A model generated the notes under the pieces. It saw only the letters and a program-made list of their open reading frames with translations. It had not been told where the DNA came from and did not search any database. Below are positions 38,951 through 48,116 of a stretch of DNA of 64,000 bases, piece by piece (positions within the stretch are counted from its first letter, which is position 1; the number at the start of each line of letters is the position of its first letter). Made by a program: the position numbers and the translations under genes. The stretch lies in the IMG/VR virus record IMGVR_UViG_3300046517_002304, positions 310,001-374,000 of that record; one strand, 5' to 3'.

Positions 38951-39328
38951 CTAGTAGAGTTTTAAATGCTTTGTGAACGGGTCAATTTTCTCTGCATAGT
39001 CTGGCCCGATAGCCAAACAAGTTTTTGTAGGAACTCCATGAAATTCAGTCAACCCGCTGTCAGTAATAAGATAAACTTCAATTCCGGCATCCTTTACTTT
39101 CTGATACAACTCTAACATCTCTTGTTCGGAATCTATCTGTAAAACAATTTTGGGGAAATGGTTCTCCAGCCAAAACTTCTGAACATCGGTATAACTGGAC
39201 GTATTATTTTTAAAATCAGAATGCGCTCGGATAAACGCCATTACTGCATGGGACAATTGTGCAAATTCTTTTCCTTTACGTACCTTCAGATCATTACGGA
39301 TAACTATACTTTGTTTTATTTTTGACAT
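38951..39328 (-). CDS. pth2: Peptidyl-tRNA hydrolase, Pth2 family
   Basis: KQSIVIRNDL...KGKEFAQLSHA...KIVL...DSGLTEF...TCLAIGP...HLKLY. Confidence 0.92.
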   Translation of the reverse strand: MSKIKQSIVIRNDLKVRKGKEFAQLSHAVMAFIRAHSDFKNNTSSYTDVQKFWLENHFPKIVLQIDSEQEMLELYQKVKDAGIEVYLITDSGLTEFHGVPTKTCLAIGPDYAEKIDPFTKHLKLY

Positions 39329-39397: not shown

Positions 39398-39697
39398 ATG
39401 GCAATTACAGCAATCAAGCCGTGCGGAAACCAAATTTTGATCGAACTTCTAACTGAAAACGAACTAATGAATACCACTCTATTCGTTCCAGAAGGCTCCC
39501 AGGGCGCTGGTTCGGCTCCACAGGGAGTTGTCCTAGACTTTGGTCCACAGTTTGACGGAGCAAAGTGGGGCGTTCAGAAGGGCGATAGAGTTATTGTGCA
39601 GGGAACTTTTATTCCAGTGCCCAAGGTAGGGAACGGCCACCGGGCCATGGGATTAACCGAGTTTCAGCACATCAAGGCTGTTCTAGTTGAAGGCTAA
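39398..39697 (+). CDS. groES: GroES/Cpn10-like co-chaperonin
   Basis: IKPCGNQILIE...LFVP...QGVVLDFGP...VQKGDRVI...IKAVL; AAGGA SD and TATAAT upstream. Confidence 0.8.
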   Translation: MAITAIKPCGNQILIELLTENELMNTTLFVPEGSQGAGSAPQGVVLDFGPQFDGAKWGVQKGDRVIVQGTFIPVPKVGNGHRAMGLTEFQHIKAVLVEG

Positions 39698-40249
39698 CGC
39701 TCTTTGCACTTCAGAAGCAAAAAATCTGGTCATATGTTTACGGACTTTTATATGATCCATGCCTACATCACTGCATAGCATGATGTAGGCAATTGCTTTT
39801 TCTATGTCGTCGTTATACTTTTTACAAGCATCATACATAATCTTCGCCGTATCTTCGTCTAAATCATCTTTTGCATGATTGCACAGAGCACACATTGTCT
39901 GCATGTTAGAAAGATCGTCTTTTCCGCCGCAACTGGCTGGAAGTATATGATCTTTCGTTATTAAAATATATTTATCCTTCGGTGTTTTATGATATAAGTT
40001 AAAATGTGCTCGGCCAGTTGATTCATATGGGCGCTGAAGAATAAAAATATTACCAACTACTCCGCATCGCACGCAAGATAGGCTTTTAATAAAGGTTCGA
40101 TATCTCATTGAGAACATTTTAACTTTAAACGTTTGCTCTCCTACTTTATACTCTTTATCCGTATCCGAAACGTACGGCAAAACAGCATCAATGGCAAATT
40201 CGCCAAAGGTTTGATTAGATTGCCAAGTGTCTATCAATGACATCCCCAT
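39683..40249 (-). CDS. HNH endonuclease
   Basis: CVRCG...TKDHILPASCGGKDDLSNMQTMCALCNHAK. Confidence 0.85.
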   Translation of the reverse strand: MGMSLIDTWQSNQTFGEFAIDAVLPYVSDTDKEYKVGEQTFKVKMFSMRYRTFIKSLSCVRCGVVGNIFILQRPYESTGRAHFNLYHKTPKDKYILITKDHILPASCGGKDDLSNMQTMCALCNHAKDDLDEDTAKIMYDACKKYNDDIEKAIAYIMLCSDVGMDHIKVRKHMTRFFASEVQRALAFN

Positions 40250-40689
40250 TATCGCATCCTGAAATCAAAATAAAAGATAGCGGTGTAGTAGAGACAAAGG
40301 AAGTGAATAAATTGATCAAACCCAACCGTGGTAAAGAACCAATATTTATTATCGCTTTGCCACAACTTGGCAGTTAGCCTACTGGTAATAGCATCAGTGA
40401 TAAAGTGTAATATCCAGTTTGCTATACAAAAAGCCAGTAACATACGCGAATCAAGCTCCTCCGCATAGGAAAACTGTCTTATAATAAAAAGTCCTACGCC
40501 TAAGATACACGTATAAATAGAAACATGAGCGCACAAAGTCGCCAGCCCCTTGCTTTTATTCTCTGCCAGATACCGTCCTTGACACACAAAATCTCCGATA
40601 AAGTGGAGTAGCATAATTAAAGCAAATCCACCATTGAAGATATACAGCATATCTTCCAGGTGAAATTTCCAAAGGTCAATTATTGACAT
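40249..40689 (-). CDS. DUF3307-like membrane protein
   Basis: HFIGDFVCQ...K...HVSIY...HFITD...DQFIH. Confidence 0.75.
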   Translation of the reverse strand: MSIIDLWKFHLEDMLYIFNGGFALIMLLHFIGDFVCQGRYLAENKSKGLATLCAHVSIYTCILGVGLFIIRQFSYAEELDSRMLLAFCIANWILHFITDAITSRLTAKLWQSDNKYWFFTTVGFDQFIHFLCLYYTAIFYFDFRMR

Positions 40690-41313: not shown

Positions 41314-42384
41314 TTAGTTACTCCAGTTAGATGGGACACTACTCTTAACTGCTTCAATCAAAAATGGAGTAGGGTCCAAAAGATTATCTGGCTGATCTTC
41401 ATCTAATCCCCAACTAATGCTCTTAGTGGTTCCGTGAGCATACAGTTCTATATGAAGCATTGATGTAGAATGATACGGAATATCGCTTCTTTTTTTACTA
41501 TCTTTAAGTACTGGTTTAACAAAGCCAATCATTTCGTTCTTCTGAACTACTCGTCCGACCGTAATACCTGGGTTTTCTGTTATTTCACCATAATTGATAA
41601 CACCAGTTGCGCCAGCAACCAACACAGATCGGGTATTATTCCACCATGGCGACCCCGCTTTCTCGCCTGTGAAATCTTCAACGGCAACCACAACGCCTCT
41701 CTCCATAGCAAAAACGTGCGCATCCTTACTGCAATAAAGATCAACTCCAGTATGATGGTCATATTTACGAGCTACACCGAATGCGCCTGGATGTTTGCCT
41801 GTCGGGATAAATTTACTTTTAAGTATAGAGTAATGATATACTGGATATCTCCATACAAAGAATCGCTTAACAGAATCAACAATGTCAGAAATTTCTGTCA
41901 TTCCTCCCACGCCAACATCGCCACAAACCAATTCTTTAAGAACTGGTTGCCAAATGGTCAAATGAGGAACGTGGCGCTGTACGATGCTGATATGCTCCAT
42001 GGTAATAGGATGTTCCCACATTGCGGTATTAGCCGCAGGAGCAAGTACGATAGGCTTAGTGCGGTCCCATGCCCTATAGATACTGGTCAGAAGATTATCG
42101 CAGATACCATTAGCAAATTTAGCCAAGGTATTCATGCTAAGCGGAGCTATAACCAGCACATCCGCTTTTCTTCTAAGATCTATATGGAGTACGCTTTGAT
42201 GAGAATTCCAACAATCCCATTCAGAAGCATCATCAAAAATCGTGCCGAAATATTCAGGCAGAGTAAACCGCTTCGCGGATTCTGTGAAGACAACGTCAAC
42301 ATGGCCAATTTCTGAAAGTTCTCTCTTGATTTTTGGACCAAGAGTTGCTGCCACACTGCCAGTTATGCCAAGGAGGATATTCAT
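41314..42384 (-). CDS. coaC: Phosphopantothenoylcysteine decarboxylase (HFCD flavoprotein) fused to an M23 peptidase-like domain
   Basis: GITGSVAA, HIDL...APLSMNTLAKFANGICDNLLT, PAANTAMW, LVCGDVG; C-terminal HTGVD...MLHIEL...DPTPFL. Confidence 0.85.
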   Translation of the reverse strand: MNILLGITGSVAATLGPKIKRELSEIGHVDVVFTESAKRFTLPEYFGTIFDDASEWDCWNSHQSVLHIDLRRKADVLVIAPLSMNTLAKFANGICDNLLTSIYRAWDRTKPIVLAPAANTAMWEHPITMEHISIVQRHVPHLTIWQPVLKELVCGDVGVGGMTEISDIVDSVKRFFVWRYPVYHYSILKSKFIPTGKHPGAFGVARKYDHHTGVDLYCSKDAHVFAMERGVVVAVEDFTGEKAGSPWWNNTRSVLVAGATGVINYGEITENPGITVGRVVQKNEMIGFVKPVLKDSKKRSDIPYHSTSMLHIELYAHGTTKSISWGLDEDQPDNLLDPTPFLIEAVKSSVPSNWSN

Positions 42385-42386
42385 GA

Positions 42387-43103
42387 TTAGTAGTATCCTT
42401 CAATGATATCAATTAAGCCTGCTGCATTATAAATGGGTAAAGAGTGCTTCAGAAAAAACGGCTCTTTATTCGGCCTAACAACCGTCAAATTATGATTTCC
42501 ACTTTTTATTTCATTAAGGAGATTACCAACACACATATCGGCATTAGTAGATTGGATCTGTTTTTCACAAGCTTCAATCAGATACTTCTGCGAAACATCC
42601 GTCAGAAGTTTAAATCCGACAAGCAATGCAAACGGACACCATTTTTTAACCAGCTTAATAATCTTGGTTGTCTTCTTAAGACTTATAATTAACTCCTCTT
42701 CATTGGAGCTAATCTTCCCATTGGATGGAACGGGCGCATAATCACTGACTGCCGCAGCCAGTATGATTACATCTGGTTCGTATTCGCCACAAGAATATCC
42801 TTTAACCTTATCAAAGTAATCGTTGTAGTCTACGTACTCAACACCATCGTATTGCTTAGAATAGCTGTTATAATTCTCAAGCATTTCATATACATTATCT
42901 TCTGCTTCAATTCCTTTTGTAGCATCAATGCGTTTAGAGAATGGAGTATCGGAGCCTTTGGCATAAATGAAAACAACTTCATGGCCAGCTTTCATAGCGG
43001 CCAGAGCAAGGATAGAGCCAAATCGGCCAGTAGAATTGTTGCCGATATGACGCACATCATCAATGGGCGCTTTGGTGCCACCGGAGGTTATGAGAAATTT
43101 CAT
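42387..43103 (-). CDS. coaB: Phosphopantothenate-cysteine ligase
   Basis: LITSGGTKAPIDDVRHIGNNSTGRFG, AAAVSDY, KISS, LVGFKL. Confidence 0.9.
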   Translation of the reverse strand: MKFLITSGGTKAPIDDVRHIGNNSTGRFGSILALAAMKAGHEVVFIYAKGSDTPFSKRIDATKGIEAEDNVYEMLENYNSYSKQYDGVEYVDYNDYFDKVKGYSCGEYEPDVIILAAAVSDYAPVPSNGKISSNEEELIISLKKTTKIIKLVKKWCPFALLVGFKLLTDVSQKYLIEACEKQIQSTNADMCVGNLLNEIKSGNHNLTVVRPNKEPFFLKHSLPIYNAAGLIDIIEGYY

Positions 43104-46063: not shown

Positions 46064-47533
46064 TTACGCCGAAATTTCGGCGTACCTTTCATTGTTAAGA
46101 ACTTCCAGCATAGACTCATACGGAGTCACGGAAATTCCGCCAAGCAAATACTTCAAAATGACTGGCGAACAGCCGCTCACAAGATAAGTTCCACGCTCGT
46201 CCTTCTTCACCGGAACGCCCTTCTCCGGAGTTGCATTCACGTTCCAGAAAACAAGCTTCGGCATTTCATAACCGCTTTGCTCGTACTTCTGCTTAATAAC
46301 TTCAAAATTAGTTTTATCATTATCTCTGCATGCAACATCAAACTGCATGTCGGAAATAATGTAAAGCACATTCGGCATTTGATGCAAAGGAACATTATTC
46401 TCCACCGCAGTAGAGAGAACCACATCAAACACCGCTTGCAGGTTAGTGTTCTGATTCCAGTCAGCACGACGCAAGTTAGCGTCCTTTTCCTTCAACGTCT
46501 TGCCCTTCAACTTCTGCAAAGACGGTCGGTTAGAAAAAGTAATGAAAGCATCCTTGAATGCACCCTGATTGCGCTCCGCAAAGTAGATTGCCAGTGAAGT
46601 GCAAACATCCAAAGGATTTCCGTTCATGCTACCGCTAACGTCAGCGATAACAAGACCATTATGCGGATTATCCTTAAGATAATCAGGAAGCGCCTTCCAC
46701 TGCAACTCTAAGGACCGAGCCTGTTGCTCATCGGAATATCTAATGGCCTTTATAATATCATAAGGATAAAGAGTTCCTGCCTTAATTTCAGCTTCGCCCT
46801 TTTCCACTTTTTCCAAGTATTCGGTATATCTCTCACCGTCATGCTTATGAAATGCCGTTCGGTAAATCATGCTTGCACGACTAGGAACACGCTCATAGTT
46901 AATGGCGTCCCATTTTCCTGCACACATATTCTTCTCAACAATATTAATGCGGGTTCGCAGACCAACCAGCATCTTGCGGTATTCCTTCGCAGAATATCCA
47001 AGGCGATTTGACAGGAAATTCGCCAGTTGAACCGTCTTTTTGCTGCTGGTGTTGTTGGACGGCATCCACTTACCAAGCAACGAAACTTCTCCGCTGCTGG
47101 AAAGGTCGGCATTCAACTGCTTAGAAATAAATTCAAGTACCGCCTGTTCACATGGCGTACCAATCAAACAAAACAAGTCATCCCATCGTCCGAAATGAGG
47201 AATGTGCTTGATGTTTTTAAGAACAGCTTCCTTATGATTATTAGCAAGGAACGTCAAAAGACGACGAACTACATCGCGTTCGCCTTGCCCACCACGAATA
47301 TCGCGGAAGTGAAGCAGACATCGCAATGCTAGAGTATTGTCCTCTGAAAATGCTCTACCGAACAGATGTTCAACACTTTCCCAATTACCTTTTAGGGAAG
47401 AACGACAAGCCGCACCCATCGCATAGAAGTCTAGCAAATCAGACTTCGTAGACTTGAGCGTCTTGGCTCCGTTCGCAGTTTCAGTGGTATTGAGGCTATC
47501 CTCAAGGTTATTTACGAATGTATTTTCGTCCAT
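46064..47533 (-). CDS. DUF2828 family TROVE/Ro60-like protein with C-terminal vWA domain
   Basis: TANGA, RDIRGGQGER, FGRWDDL, GKWMP, INYERVPS, MIDAS DVSGSM, ISDMQFD, VFWNV. Confidence 0.85.
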   Translation of the reverse strand: MDENTFVNNLEDSLNTTETANGAKTLKSTKSDLLDFYAMGAACRSSLKGNWESVEHLFGRAFSEDNTLALRCLLHFRDIRGGQGERDVVRRLLTFLANNHKEAVLKNIKHIPHFGRWDDLFCLIGTPCEQAVLEFISKQLNADLSSSGEVSLLGKWMPSNNTSSKKTVQLANFLSNRLGYSAKEYRKMLVGLRTRINIVEKNMCAGKWDAINYERVPSRASMIYRTAFHKHDGERYTEYLEKVEKGEAEIKAGTLYPYDIIKAIRYSDEQQARSLELQWKALPDYLKDNPHNGLVIADVSGSMNGNPLDVCTSLAIYFAERNQGAFKDAFITFSNRPSLQKLKGKTLKEKDANLRRADWNQNTNLQAVFDVVLSTAVENNVPLHQMPNVLYIISDMQFDVACRDNDKTNFEVIKQKYEQSGYEMPKLVFWNVNATPEKGVPVKKDERGTYLVSGCSPVILKYLLGGISVTPYESMLEVLNNERYAEISA

Positions 47534-48041: not shown

Positions 48042-48116
48042 TGGCTGTGGTCAGATTTGAACTGACGATCTCAAGGTTATGGGCCTCGCGGGGACTCCAG
48101 GCTCCCCCACACAGCG
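48042..48116 (-). tRNA. tRNA-Met(CAT), initiator-like, CCA not encoded
   Basis: Acceptor CGCTGTG/CACAGCC (1:72 mismatch), D arm GGGG/CCCC, anticodon arm CGAGG-CCCATAA-CCTTG, T arm GTCAG-TTCAAAT-CTGAC. Confidence 0.9.

What the first reader, a model, noticed from the sequence alone, without database searches (positions are those of the whole stretch)
41314..43103. Split coaB/coaC pair with CoaC fused to an M23 peptidase-like domain
Seen: coaB then a single 356-aa ORF with a CoaC half (catalytic His and Cys regions present) and an M23-like half (HxxxD present; the second motif reads MLHIEL rather than HxH). Established: most bacteria fuse CoaBC, and M23 domains cut or bind peptidoglycan. A cytoplasmic CoA enzyme joined to such a domain is unexpected, and CoA synthesis genes are unusual phage cargo to my knowledge. 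Inference: auxiliary CoA supply or repair, or a chance fusion.
Basis: partly seen in the sequence, partly recalled or inferred. Interest (0 to 1): 0.6.

Follow-up and report, generated by a model that had tools for sequence, protein, structure and literature searches.

The report
Phage CoaB plus CoaC–M23-like fusion module
A 511-kb phage carries two coenzyme-A pathway enzymes, one of them permanently fused to an unusual zinc-site "M23" domain, and this three-part set recurs in many huge phages, which points to an uncharacterised viral use of the 4'-phosphopantetheine branch of metabolism.

Summary
Window 42387-43103(-) encodes a 238-aa CoaB. Window 41314-42384(-) encodes one 356-aa protein with a CoaC half (residues 1-176) and an M23-fold half (177-356).

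The fusion is neither chance nor an assembly artefact:
- The identical ORF was assembled in at least 8 contigs.
- At least 118 protein clusters (42-56% identity) have the same architecture, on phage contigs up to 622 kb and in a 735-kb phage.
- coaB is almost always adjacent.
- Where coaC is unfused, a stand-alone copy of the same M23-like protein lies in an M23-coaB-coaC cluster.

The CoaC half is eukaryote-type, about 50% identical to vertebrate PPCDC, and keeps its catalytic His, Asn and Cys.

The M23 half keeps the three zinc ligands (H211, D215, H311). Both catalytic histidines are replaced, by E267 and M309, and these are fixed in 288 of 289 relatives. It has no export signal, and its PA5oct homologue is probably not in the virion.

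The host genome of the window is a complete phage record that encodes no other CoA step.

Best reading: a phage module that makes 4'-phosphopantetheine, coupled to a cytoplasmic zinc amidase-like domain of unknown substrate. It is probably not a murein hydrolase. I rate it a new variant of known kinds, of moderate to high interest.

The parts
42387..43103 (-). coaB: phosphopantothenate--cysteine ligase (PPCS), 238 aa, monofunctional type
   Evidence: PF04127 at 6.9e-31. NF005231 at 4e-40 and TIGR02114 at 7.5e-35, both below their equivalog cut-offs. The closest solved relative is S. pneumoniae 2gk4 (2.6e-27), followed by human PPCS 1p9o (1.3e-15). The SGGT, NNSTG, AAAVSDY and KISS motifs are present.
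41857..42384 (-). CoaC half (residues 1-176) of the 356-aa fusion: eukaryote-type phosphopantothenoylcysteine decarboxylase
   Evidence: PF02441 at 1.9e-33. Human PPCDC 1qzu matches at 9.6e-50 and AtHAL3a at 9.5e-41, against bacterial CoaBC 6tgv at 9.4e-19. The nearest named relatives are vertebrate PPCDC at 47-52% identity.
42184..42186 (-). CoaC catalytic His67
   Evidence: Invariant in 118 fusion proteins. It aligns to the conserved His of human PPCDC. Codon verified.
42016..42039 (-). CoaC PxMNxxMW-type motif (reads PAANTAMW here)
   Evidence: N119 and M122 are invariant and W123 nearly so. Translation verified.
41923..41925 (-). CoaC Cys154 in the (A/V)CGD clamp
   Evidence: C154, G158 and G160 are invariant in 118 fusion proteins. 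Codon verified.
41317..41856 (-). M23/LytM-fold domain (residues 177-356), a divergent cytoplasmic variant
   Evidence: AF2 model with pLDDT 93.7. VIA-align Z 14.3 to StM23 9gy1 and LECT2 5b0h, and 14.1 to EnvC LytM. Foldseek probability 1.00 to many M23 structures. PF01551 scores 22.8 bits, below the gathering cut-off.
41740..41754 (-). HxxxD zinc-ligand motif (H211, D215)
   Evidence: Aligned with HRGVD of E. coli MepM. H211 is present in 289/289 and D215 in 288/289 relatives.
41584..41592 (-). YGE: E267 replaces the catalytic His of the canonical Y-x-H-L motif
   Evidence: Aligned with YMHL of MepM and YAHL of zoocin A. E267 is present in 288/289 and Y265 in 289/289 relatives.
41446..41460 (-). 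MLHIE: M309 replaces the first His of HxH; H311 (third zinc ligand) and E313 are kept
   Evidence: Aligned with HLHYE of MepM. M309 is present in 288/289, H311 in 288/289 and E313 in 281/289 relatives.

Best explanation
This is a conserved three-part module of huge (jumbo and mega) phages, expressed in the host cytoplasm.

CoaB ligates L-cysteine to 4'-phosphopantothenate. The eukaryote-type CoaC half decarboxylates the product to 4'-phosphopantetheine. Both roles are inferred from intact, strongly conserved catalytic motifs.

The C-terminal half is a true M23/LytM fold that keeps its zinc site. Its two catalytic histidines have been exchanged for an invariant Glu and Met. It is functionally coupled to CoaB/CoaC, as shown by recurrent fusion and by conserved gene clustering.

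I take this domain to be a cytoplasmic zinc-dependent hydrolase or binder of a small amide or thiol compound from this branch of metabolism, and not a peptidoglycan hydrolase. My favoured specific guess, at roughly 30%, is that it acts on CoaC's product, 4'-phosphopantetheine. The reasons are that it is always fused to CoaC and never to CoaB in the loci examined, and that the phage encodes no later CoA step.
For: Shown:
- The ORFs and domains are as described.
- The identical fused ORF occurs in at least 8 independent contigs.
- At least 118 fused homologues exist at 42-56% identity over about 97% of the length, on contigs up to 622 kb. The same fusion plus coaB is present in the 735-kb phage LR756501.
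- coaB is adjacent in L005, L006 and L008 and in nearly all of about 25 IMG/VR loci. Gene order is coaB then fusion in most, and fusion then coaB in L003, L031 and L045.
- Nine loci carry three separate genes in the order M23-like, coaB, coaC.
- No other neighbouring gene is conserved.
- In the M23-domain tree the fused rows are not one clade. At least 3 label changes are forced, so the link has survived several fusion or fission events.
- CoaC residues H67, N119 and C154 are invariant. The CoaC half is about 50% identical to human PPCDC.
- The M23 fold scores Z 14.3.
- The zinc triad plus E267, M309, R206 and Y265 are each fixed in at least 288 of 289 family members.
- The full-length AF2 model has pLDDT 95 and pTM 0.88, which suggests a fixed orientation between the two domains.
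- The phage genome is complete (direct terminal repeats). No match to Pfam's PanK type I or III, CoaE or PP-binding (carrier-protein) families was found. The only cytidylyltransferase hit is an HldE-like protein.
- The PA5oct M23 protein, probably the homologue, was not detected in virions (PMC7318152).

Inferred: enzymatic activity of all three parts, cytoplasmic location, and the identity of the M23-like domain's substrate.
Against: - No activity was measured for any of the three parts.
- CoaB and CoaC score below NCBIfam equivalog cut-offs.
- The CoaBC steps are not usually thought to limit CoA synthesis in bacteria (my background knowledge), so a plain 'CoA boost' is not an obvious benefit.
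- Stand-alone M23-like genes occur in complete jumbo phages that have no coaB or coaC (PA5oct, XacN1). The domain therefore does not need phage CoaBC.
- Nine phage loci have coaB-coaC with no M23-like gene within 6 kb.
- Endolysins also lack signal peptides, so a cytoplasmic location alone does not exclude a lytic role. There are weak PHROG 'endolysin' matches.
- The complex test between the two halves gave no verdict.
Confidence: 0.55

Rival explanations
1. The M23-like half is non-catalytic. It would be a zinc-stabilised binding, scaffolding or regulatory module, comparable to LECT2 or to the LytM domains of EnvC and NlpD. It might hold CoaC together with CoaB or with a host protein, replacing the covalent CoaB-CoaC link of bacterial CoaBC.
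For: Both canonical catalytic histidines are missing. LECT2 and the EnvC LytM domain are among the top structural matches (Z 14.3 and 14.1), and LECT2 shares the N-terminal G-x-[FY]-G/S-x-x-R...H-x-G-V-D motif. A pTM of 0.88 suggests rigid packing on CoaC. The phage CoaB and CoaC are separate polypeptides.
Against: EnvC-type activators have lost the zinc ligands, whereas here the ligands and a Glu at the catalytic position are fixed in 288-289 of 289 sequences. That pattern is typical of an active site. Stand-alone copies exist in phages with no CoaB or CoaC to scaffold. The complex test gave no verdict.
Confidence: 0.2
2. The M23-like half is a genuine peptidoglycan hydrolase, such as an endolysin or lysis accessory that waits in the cytoplasm for a holin. 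Its fusion to CoaC would then only be a co-expression accident that became fixed.
For: The fold is M23. The zinc ligands are intact. There are weak PHROG endolysin matches. The PA5oct paper lists its M23 protein among murein hydrolases. M23 endolysins exist, for example LysTt72 8s3m and phage 2638A 6yj1, which appear in the match lists.
Against: Both catalytic histidines are replaced in every member. No cell-wall-binding domain is present. The link to coaB/coaC is kept through fusion, fission and gene reordering, which is hard to explain for a lysin. Other fusion partners are a NUDIX hydrolase and unknown cytoplasmic-looking domains, with no lysis modules among them. No holin or spanin context is conserved.
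Confidence: 0.1
3. The M23-like half works upstream, as a cytoplasmic peptidase that frees cysteine from small thiol peptides such as Cys-Gly or other glutathione-derived peptides. It would feed CoaB during infection.
For: CoaB needs free cysteine. From background knowledge, M23 enzymes prefer bonds next to Gly or Ala. A related phage contig that carries an orphan M23-like gene also encodes glutathionylspermidine synthase next to a DFP-like ligase, about 37 kb from the M23-like gene.
Against: The domain is fused to CoaC and never to CoaB in the roughly 28 fused loci examined. There is no direct evidence for any peptide substrate.
Confidence: 0.1
4. The fusion is an assembly, frameshift or chance artefact, or the pair modifies peptides in the manner of a lantibiotic LanD enzyme and does not act on pantothenate derivatives.
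For: One relative (L062) has the two halves in overlapping ORFs in different frames. EpiD and MrsD appear as distant matches of the CoaC half (1.3e-13 to 2.2e-06).
Against: The ORF is identical in at least 8 independent contigs, and there are at least 118 fused homologues. The CoaC half is far closer to genuine PPCDC (9.6e-50) than to EpiD, and it keeps the Cys that EpiD-type enzymes lack (the latter point is background knowledge). No precursor-peptide or other RiPP gene is conserved nearby.
Confidence: 0.03

Closest known systems
Bacterial bifunctional CoaBC (Dfp), e.g. E. coli, M. smegmatis 6tgv
   Same: It has the same two catalytic domains (Flavoprotein PF02441 and DFP PF04127) and presumably carries out the same two reactions.
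   Different: Here the two enzymes are separate genes, usually in the order coaB then coaC. The CoaC half is much closer to eukaryotic PPCDC (9.6e-50) than to bacterial CoaBC (9.4e-19). CoaC also carries an extra M23-fold domain.
Eukaryotic monofunctional PPCDC (human 1qzu, Arabidopsis AtHAL3a 1e20/1mvl) and PPCS (human 1p9o)
   Same: The CoaC half is about 50% identical over 175 residues and shares the His, PxMNxxMW-type and CGD motifs. It is monofunctional and split from PPCS.
   Different: The gene is phage-encoded, has a C-terminal M23-like domain, and pairs with a CoaB that most resembles the Streptococcus-type enzyme 2gk4.
Active M23 metallopeptidases (LytM, lysostaphin, MepM, zoocin A, StM23)
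   Same: Same fold (Z 12.6-14.3). The HxxxD motif and the final His zinc ligand are the same.
   Different: The catalytic His of Y-x-H-L is Glu, and the first His of HxH is Met, in essentially all members. There is no signal peptide or wall-binding domain. The domain is fused or clustered with cytoplasmic cofactor enzymes.
LECT2 (vertebrate M23-fold zinc protein without known protease activity)
   Same: It is the joint best structural match (Z 14.3, 131 of 133 residues aligned, 25% identity). It shares the N-terminal motif before HxGVD. From background knowledge, it keeps its zinc site while lacking the full catalytic set.
   Different: LECT2 is a secreted signalling ligand. The phage family has an invariant Glu at the catalytic position and a metabolic gene context.
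Degenerate LytM domains (EnvC, NlpD, DipM, SpoIIQ)
   Same: M23 fold without the canonical catalytic histidines.
   Different: From background knowledge, those domains have lost zinc ligands and act in the periplasm as amidase activators. The phage domain keeps all three ligands.
Avipoxvirus 'HAL3 domain' proteins
   Same: They are virus-encoded, stand-alone, eukaryote-type PPCDC homologues, 46-53% identical to the phage CoaC half.
   Different: They belong to animal viruses and have no M23-like domain and no adjacent coaB. They were not analysed further here.

Membership tests
PPCDC / CoaC (HFCD flavoproteins) | Flavoprotein (PF02441) domain above the Pfam threshold | tested here: met
   115.8 bits against a 22.7-bit cut-off, residues 1-174.
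PPCDC / CoaC (HFCD flavoproteins) | Catalytic His, PxMNxxMW Asn motif and the Cys of the substrate clamp | tested here: met
   H67, N119, M122 and C154 are invariant in 118 fusion proteins. The window protein reads PAANTAMW, with one Met replaced by Ala. The alignment to human PPCDC covers all of these motifs.
PPCDC / CoaC (HFCD flavoproteins) | Score above NCBIfam equivalog cut-offs (bacterial models TIGR02113, TIGR00521) | tested here: not met
   109.5 bits against 261.4, and 127 bits against 219.7. This is consistent with a eukaryote-type sequence, not a bacterial one.
PPCDC / CoaC (HFCD flavoproteins) | FMN-dependent decarboxylation of 4'-phosphopantothenoylcysteine | not testable with these tools
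   This needs an enzyme assay or complementation.
PPCS / CoaB | DFP (PF04127) domain above threshold and conserved nucleotide/substrate motifs | tested here: met
   107.9 bits against a 22-bit cut-off. The protein aligns end to end with S. pneumoniae 2gk4, including the SGGT..ID.VR, STG, KISS and GFKLL motifs.
PPCS / CoaB | Score above NCBIfam equivalog cut-offs (NF005231, TIGR02114) | tested here: not met
   138 bits against 265, and 120.7 bits against 217.2.
Peptidase M23 (MEROPS M23, PF01551) | M23/LytM fold | tested here: met
   Model pLDDT 93.7. Z 11-14.3 to more than 20 M23 structures, against Z 6 or below for other folds.
Peptidase M23 (MEROPS M23, PF01551) | Pfam gathering score | tested here: not met
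   22.8 bits against 28.7 for the window protein. Several relatives pass at 29-40 bits.
Peptidase M23 (MEROPS M23, PF01551) | HxxxD zinc motif and the last His of HxH | tested here: met
   H211, D215 and H311 align with the MepM ligands and are conserved in at least 288 of 289 relatives.
Peptidase M23 (MEROPS M23, PF01551) | Two catalytic histidines (Y-x-H-L and the first His of HxH) | tested here: not met
   They are replaced by E267 and M309, each in 288/289 relatives.
Peptidase M23 (MEROPS M23, PF01551) | Access to murein (signal peptide, wall-binding domain or virion association) | tested here: inconclusive
   No wall-binding domain was found. The N-terminus is the CoaC Rossmann fold. The PA5oct M23 protein, probably the homologue, was not found in virions. 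No signal-peptide predictor was run, and holin-dependent release cannot be excluded.
Degenerate LytM activator domains (EnvC/NlpD type) | Loss of zinc ligands | tested here: not met
   All three ligands are retained.
LECT2-like M23-fold proteins | M23 fold with a zinc site but an incomplete catalytic set, plus sequence relatedness | tested here: inconclusive
   Z 14.3 at 25% identity. The profile E-value is 4.4e-4, over the N-terminal 42 residues only. Common descent beyond the M23 superfamily is not shown.

The most novel reading that the evidence does not exclude
The three parts form a closed catalytic cycle and not a CoA supply line. CoaB loads cysteine onto 4'-phosphopantothenate and CoaC decarboxylates it. 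The M23-like zinc amidase then cleaves the beta-alanyl-cysteamine bond of 4'-phosphopantetheine, releasing cysteamine and regenerating 4'-phosphopantothenate.

The module would therefore be a carrier-based cysteine decarboxylase that gives huge phages a thiol amine (or, after oxidation, the diamine cystamine) for redox control, DNA charge neutralisation or a modification.

Orphan copies and the NUDIX fusion would do the same from the host's 4'-phosphopantetheine or CoA.
Probability: 0.15. Interest if true: 0.85.

Novelty: new variant of a known kind. Interest (0 to 1): 0.62.

Why it matters
Each component belongs to a known superfamily, but the combination appears not to have been described.

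- **An unrecognised M23 subfamily.** It is virus-dominated and consists mostly of 160-aa proteins found in jumbo phages, including cultured ones such as PA5oct, XacN1 and RAS14. It keeps the zinc site and carries a fixed Glu/Met replacement of the catalytic histidines.
- **A genetic tie to the middle CoA steps.** This subfamily is repeatedly linked to the two middle steps of CoA synthesis.
- **Several testable questions follow:**
  - Why do huge phages carry exactly these two steps and none of the others?
  - What does a cytoplasmic M23 fold do?
  - How did a eukaryote-type PPCDC come to be shared by phages, avipoxviruses and animals?
- **Annotation.** Hundreds of 'peptidase M23 / murein hydrolase' labels in jumbo-phage genomes may be wrong.

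If the domain turns out to act on 4'-phosphopantetheine, it would be a new enzyme activity for the M23 fold and a new kind of viral metabolic reprogramming.

Tried and rejected
- **DNA similarity.** blastn of the region against 50,697 phage records gave no match.
- **PHROGs.** Only weak 'endolysin' hits, E about 1e-3. I judged these uninformative beyond confirming the fold.
- **Reads at the junction.** I substituted independent assemblies.
- **Complex test.** Complex prediction with the CoaC half against the M23 half scored 0.00 and returned 'no answer'. It counts neither for nor against binding.
- **Genome-contig scan.** The first scan with the 66-sequence alignment failed because no stretch was conserved enough. 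Repeating it with 19 sequences found only MAG contigs (Myxococcota, Gemmatimonadota, Patescibacteria, Verrucomicrobiota) with no coaB or coaC nearby. These contigs give no reliable host assignment.
- **Further conserved neighbours.** All-against-all clustering of ORFs in 56 loci found none beyond coaB, coaC and the M23-like gene.
- **Rest of the CoA pathway in the phage genome.** CoaE, PanK types I and III and PP-binding (the acyl/peptidyl carrier-protein family) gave no match. The type II PanK search is uninformative because its control did not ring. The single cytidylyltransferase hit is a PfkB-cytidylyltransferase, HldE-like, and not CoaD.
- **NUDIX fusion.** I considered whether the NUDIX domain of P0219 is a CoA pyrophosphatase. 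By eye its sequence shows only the generic Nudix box, so it supports nothing.
- **Literature.** Five searches found no paper on a Flavoprotein-M23 fusion or on phage coaB/coaC. They found only virome surveys that list coaD/coaE, or 'four of five steps', as auxiliary genes.
- **Human and animal sequences.** No contig taken for human was handled. Vertebrate PPCDC proteins appear only as rows and were not fetched. The avipoxvirus loci returned passed through the batch scripts (ORF calling, domain search and clustering), and four proteins from four of them were Pfam-scanned. They were then set aside.
Full report
**Where the window lies.** The window is bases 310001-374000 of a 511,233-bp IMG/VR virus record with direct terminal repeats, rated 100% complete. 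Coding is almost entirely on the minus strand, GC is about 40% and GC skew is uniformly negative. Neighbouring genes are typical jumbo-phage cargo: PTH2 peptidyl-tRNA hydrolase, a Cpn10-like gene, an HNH endonuclease, DUF3307, a DUF2828/DUF7788 vWA protein and a tRNA-Met.

**The observation.**
- The two ORFs are exactly as described. coaB is at 42387-43103(-), 238 aa. A single uninterrupted 356-aa ORF is at 41314-42384(-).
- The coaB stop and the next ATG are 2 nt apart, with GAAGGA just upstream. This is compatible with coupled translation.
- Pfam gives DFP (6.9e-31) for the first protein. For the second it gives Flavoprotein (residues 1-174, 1.9e-33) plus Peptidase_M23 (residues 210-318, 22.8 bits, under the 28.7-bit cut-off).
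- NCBIfam places both enzymes nearest the coaB_strep, coaC_strep and coaBC models, but well below the equivalog cut-offs.
- The motif codons were verified: HTGVD, YGE, MLHIE, PAANTAMW, C154 and H67.

**Is the fusion real?**
- The identical 356-aa protein was called on at least 8 contigs from at least 6 samples or assemblies, always in the same gene context.
- A word-indexed search returned 1078 proteins at E <= 1e-3. Nearly all of the best 120 cover about 95-100% of the query at 42-56% identity, and most carry both Pfam domains. Their contigs reach 622, 361, 355, 344, 342 and 263 kb.
- The 735-kb uncultured phage LR756501 has a 369-aa fusion (35% identity) followed by coaB.
- The ESM Atlas has a 'Flavoprotein/Peptidase family M23' cluster whose members of known taxonomy are all viral.
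It fails for the window and for at least 118 relatives. One relative (L062) has the halves in two overlapping frames.

**The link to CoaB/CoaC goes beyond the fusion.**
- I fetched 51 IMG/VR loci and four other loci. I scored their ORFs with HMMs for the CoaC half and the M23 half, and with an iterative search seeded with the window's CoaB.
- *Arrangement A:* coaB then coaC::M23. This is the window and about 20 loci. The genes are often overlapping or abutting, and sometimes 0.3-2 kb apart.
- *Arrangement B:* coaC::M23 then coaB (L003, L031, L045).
- *Arrangement C:* three separate genes, M23-like, coaB, coaC, often overlapping (L036, L042, L047, L049-L051, L053, L056, L059).
- *Arrangement D:* coaB then coaC with no M23-like gene within 6 kb (nine loci).
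- *Arrangement E:* orphan M23-like genes (L043, L044, L048, L063).
- All-against-all clustering found no other conserved neighbour. The surrounding genes in L005, L006 and L008 are unrelated to each other.
- A maximum-likelihood tree of 53 M23 domains shows cluster C as one clade (100/99). Orphans L043, L044 and L048 nest inside a fused clade. The 'fused' label needs at least 3 changes on well-supported branches (midpoint root only).
- The association has therefore persisted through fusion, fission and gene reordering. That is the classical signature of a functional link.

**The two CoA enzymes.**
- In 118 fusion proteins the CoaC half keeps H67, N119, M122, C154, G158 and G160 invariant. From the PPCDC literature (background knowledge), these are the catalytic His, the PxMNxxMW motif and the Cys of the substrate clamp.
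- Unexpectedly, the best solved relatives are human PPCDC (9.6e-50, about 50% identity by my count of the printed alignment) and Arabidopsis HAL3a (9.5e-41). Bacterial CoaBC scores only 9.4e-19 and EpiD 1.3e-13.
- A domain-only search confirms this. Apart from unnamed metagenomic proteins, presumably phage, the nearest named proteins are vertebrate PPCDCs at 47-52% identity, plus an avipoxvirus 'HAL3 domain protein'. The only bacterial label among the best 120 is an unclassified '[bacterium]' MAG flavoprotein.
- CoaB aligns end to end with the monofunctional S. pneumoniae protein 2gk4 (2.6e-27). Human PPCS comes next (1.3e-15).
- The pair therefore does not look like a split copy of the host-type CoaBC.

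**The rest of the pathway is absent.** The complete phage genome gave no match for CoaE, PP-binding (the acyl/peptidyl carrier-protein family), or PanK types I and III. The type II PanK search had a silent control. The one cytidylyltransferase hit is a PfkB-cytidylyltransferase next to an RGP-family gene, so it is HldE-like and not CoaD. Two NUDIX genes lie elsewhere in the genome.

**The M23-like half.**
- With 66 stand-alone homologues as the alignment, AlphaFold2 gives pLDDT 93.7 and pTM 0.90.
- Foldseek and VIA-align both return only M23/LytM structures at the top. StM23 9gy1 and LECT2 5b0h score Z 14.3, EnvC LytM 14.1, lysostaphin 13.2 and LytM 12.6. The next fold, PTS EIIA, scores Z 6.
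- Alignment with E. coli MepM (fetched) places H211 and D215 on the HxxxD ligands and H311 on the second His of HxH. E267 falls on the His of Y-x-H-L and M309 on the first His of HxH. The profile alignment to zoocin A gives the same E-for-H match.
- Across 289 family members, fused and stand-alone, the counts are: H211 289, D215 288, H311 288, E267 288, M309 288, R206 289, Y265 289 and E313 281.
- This is not a decaying active site. It is a fixed alternative, with the zinc triad kept and a carboxylate where the general-base histidine normally sits. From background knowledge, a Glu general base is the norm in other zinc hydrolases, including the LAS-family dipeptidase VanX, which works on a small cytoplasmic substrate.
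- The full-length model built with 118 fusion proteins has pLDDT 95 and pTM 0.88. That is high for two domains and suggests a defined mutual orientation. I could not inspect the coordinates, and the two-chain complex test gave no verdict.

**Distribution of the M23-like family.**
- Stand-alone proteins of about 160 aa are common: 169 clusters at E <= 1e-3, on contigs up to 723 kb.
- They occur in cultured jumbo phages, including PA5oct and its relatives, XacN1, and Stenotrophomonas phages RAS14 and CM1, at 42-55% identity. There they are annotated 'peptidase M23' or hypothetical.
- The complete PA5oct and XacN1 genomes have no DFP or Flavoprotein gene.
- The PA5oct study lists its M23 protein (103-aa domain at residues 30-133, which fits this gene) as not detected in the virion by mass spectrometry (PMC7318152). 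The match between that paper's gp441 and the RefSeq gene is my inference.
- Other architectures are NUDIX-M23 (P0219), a weak DUF433 match in a C-terminal extension, and unknown N- or C-terminal extensions. None has a wall-binding domain.
- Atlas clusters of the family are mostly viral.
- In species-representative genomes the family appears only in MAG contigs from Myxococcota, Gemmatimonadota, Patescibacteria and Verrucomicrobiota, without coaB or coaC nearby.

**How it most likely works.**
- *Shown:* three conserved parts; intact motifs in all three; genetic linkage by fusion and by clustering; the M23 fold with a modified but fixed metal site; and no other CoA step in the genome.
- *Inferred:* CoaB and CoaC together make 4'-phosphopantetheine in the infected cell. 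The M23-like domain is a cytoplasmic zinc-dependent hydrolase or binder acting on a small amide or thiol compound of this pathway.
- I favour a role downstream of CoaC, with 4'-phosphopantetheine as substrate or ligand, at about 30%. The partner in every fusion examined is CoaC and never CoaB. The thiol of the product is a natural zinc ligand. A module that stops at 4'-phosphopantetheine and is not accompanied by CoaD or CoaE looks as if that compound, or something made from it, is the goal.
- The boldest version is a closed cycle in which the amidase releases cysteamine and regenerates 4'-phosphopantothenate, at about 15%.
- The rivals are a non-catalytic scaffold or regulator (20%), a murein hydrolase (10%), an upstream cysteine-releasing peptidase (10%), and an artefact or peptide-modifying system (3% or less).

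**Novelty.**
- Virome surveys have listed CoA genes as auxiliary genes: coaD and coaE in snow viromes (PMC11097641), and 'four of the five steps' in drinking-water viromes (10.1101/2021.10.07.463401).
- I found no paper that mentions a Flavoprotein-M23 fusion, a phage coaB/coaC module, or this M23 subfamily. The library searched is limited to open-access papers and bioRxiv.
- I rate the finding a new variant of known kinds. The enzymes are familiar. The Glu/Met M23 subfamily and its coupling to PPCS/PPCDC are not.

**Limits.** There are no activity data and no read-level or transcript data. I had no access to model coordinates and there is no rooted phylogeny. The counts of fused homologues are lower bounds, taken from the best 120 rows of one search.

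Noticed in passing
L035, L037, L041, L046, L057, L058 (IMG/VR records of 188-360 kb): These 'viral contigs' with a stand-alone 174-184-aa CoaC-like gene appear to be avipoxvirus genomes. Four of the six (L035, L041, L046, L058) were Pfam-scanned and have poxvirus F11, G5, Ser/Thr kinase or L1R/F9L neighbours; the other two share the same gene clusters. Their HAL3-like PPCDC is 46-53% identical to the phage CoaC half, so eukaryote-type PPCDC has been captured by both animal viruses and huge phages. Beyond the batch scripts and that Pfam scan, nothing further was done with them.
   Followed up: partly
window 38951-39328 (-): A PTH2-type (archaeal/eukaryotic-type) peptidyl-tRNA hydrolase, 125 aa, PF01981 at 5.6e-33, lies 2 kb from the module. 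This is another eukaryote/archaea-flavoured gene in this phage.
   Followed up: no
window 39398-39697 (+): This is the only gene found on the plus strand in this stretch. It is a weak Cpn10/GroES-like protein (99 aa, PF00166 at 9.8e-4, below the cut-off).
   Followed up: no
window 46064-47533 (-): A 489-aa DUF2828/DUF7788 protein with a vWA-like domain (5.9e-50 and 4.4e-41). The function of this family in phages is unknown.
   Followed up: no
window 39683-40689 (-): An HNH endonuclease (188 aa) and a DUF3307 membrane protein (146 aa) lie directly downstream of the module. Both are conserved in the near-identical contigs but not in other phages.
   Followed up: no
window 48042-48116 (-): A single tRNA-Met (CAT) gene.
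   Followed up: no
L070 1369-3772 (G001, a phage fragment with an orphan M23-like gene): A glutathionylspermidine synthase gene (PF03738 at 6.7e-145) overlaps the start of a 427-aa protein with a weak DFP/CoaB-like domain (32.7 bits). This suggests thiol-peptide/polyamine ligase chemistry in a related phage. The pair lies about 37 kb from the M23-like gene.
   Followed up: partly
G000:C1:509082-511161 (L010 456-2535): Near the genome end there is a PfkB-cytidylyltransferase (HldE-like, 387 aa) next to a 'reversibly glycosylated polypeptide' family protein (PF03214 at 2.3e-40). This looks like a sugar-nucleotide module, not CoaD.
   Followed up: partly
L062 5995-7052: In this one relative the CoaC and M23 halves lie in two overlapping ORFs in different frames. 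This is either a real fission or a sequencing frameshift.
   Followed up: no
P0219 (314 aa, JGI metagenome): A NUDIX hydrolase fused N-terminally to the same M23-like domain. This is a second fusion to a cytoplasmic nucleotide/cofactor enzyme. The NUDIX substrate is unknown.
   Followed up: partly
L008 1740-2906: An IS605 OrfB/TnpB (Cas12f-like) gene lies 2.4 kb upstream of the module in a 263-kb phage contig.
   Followed up: no
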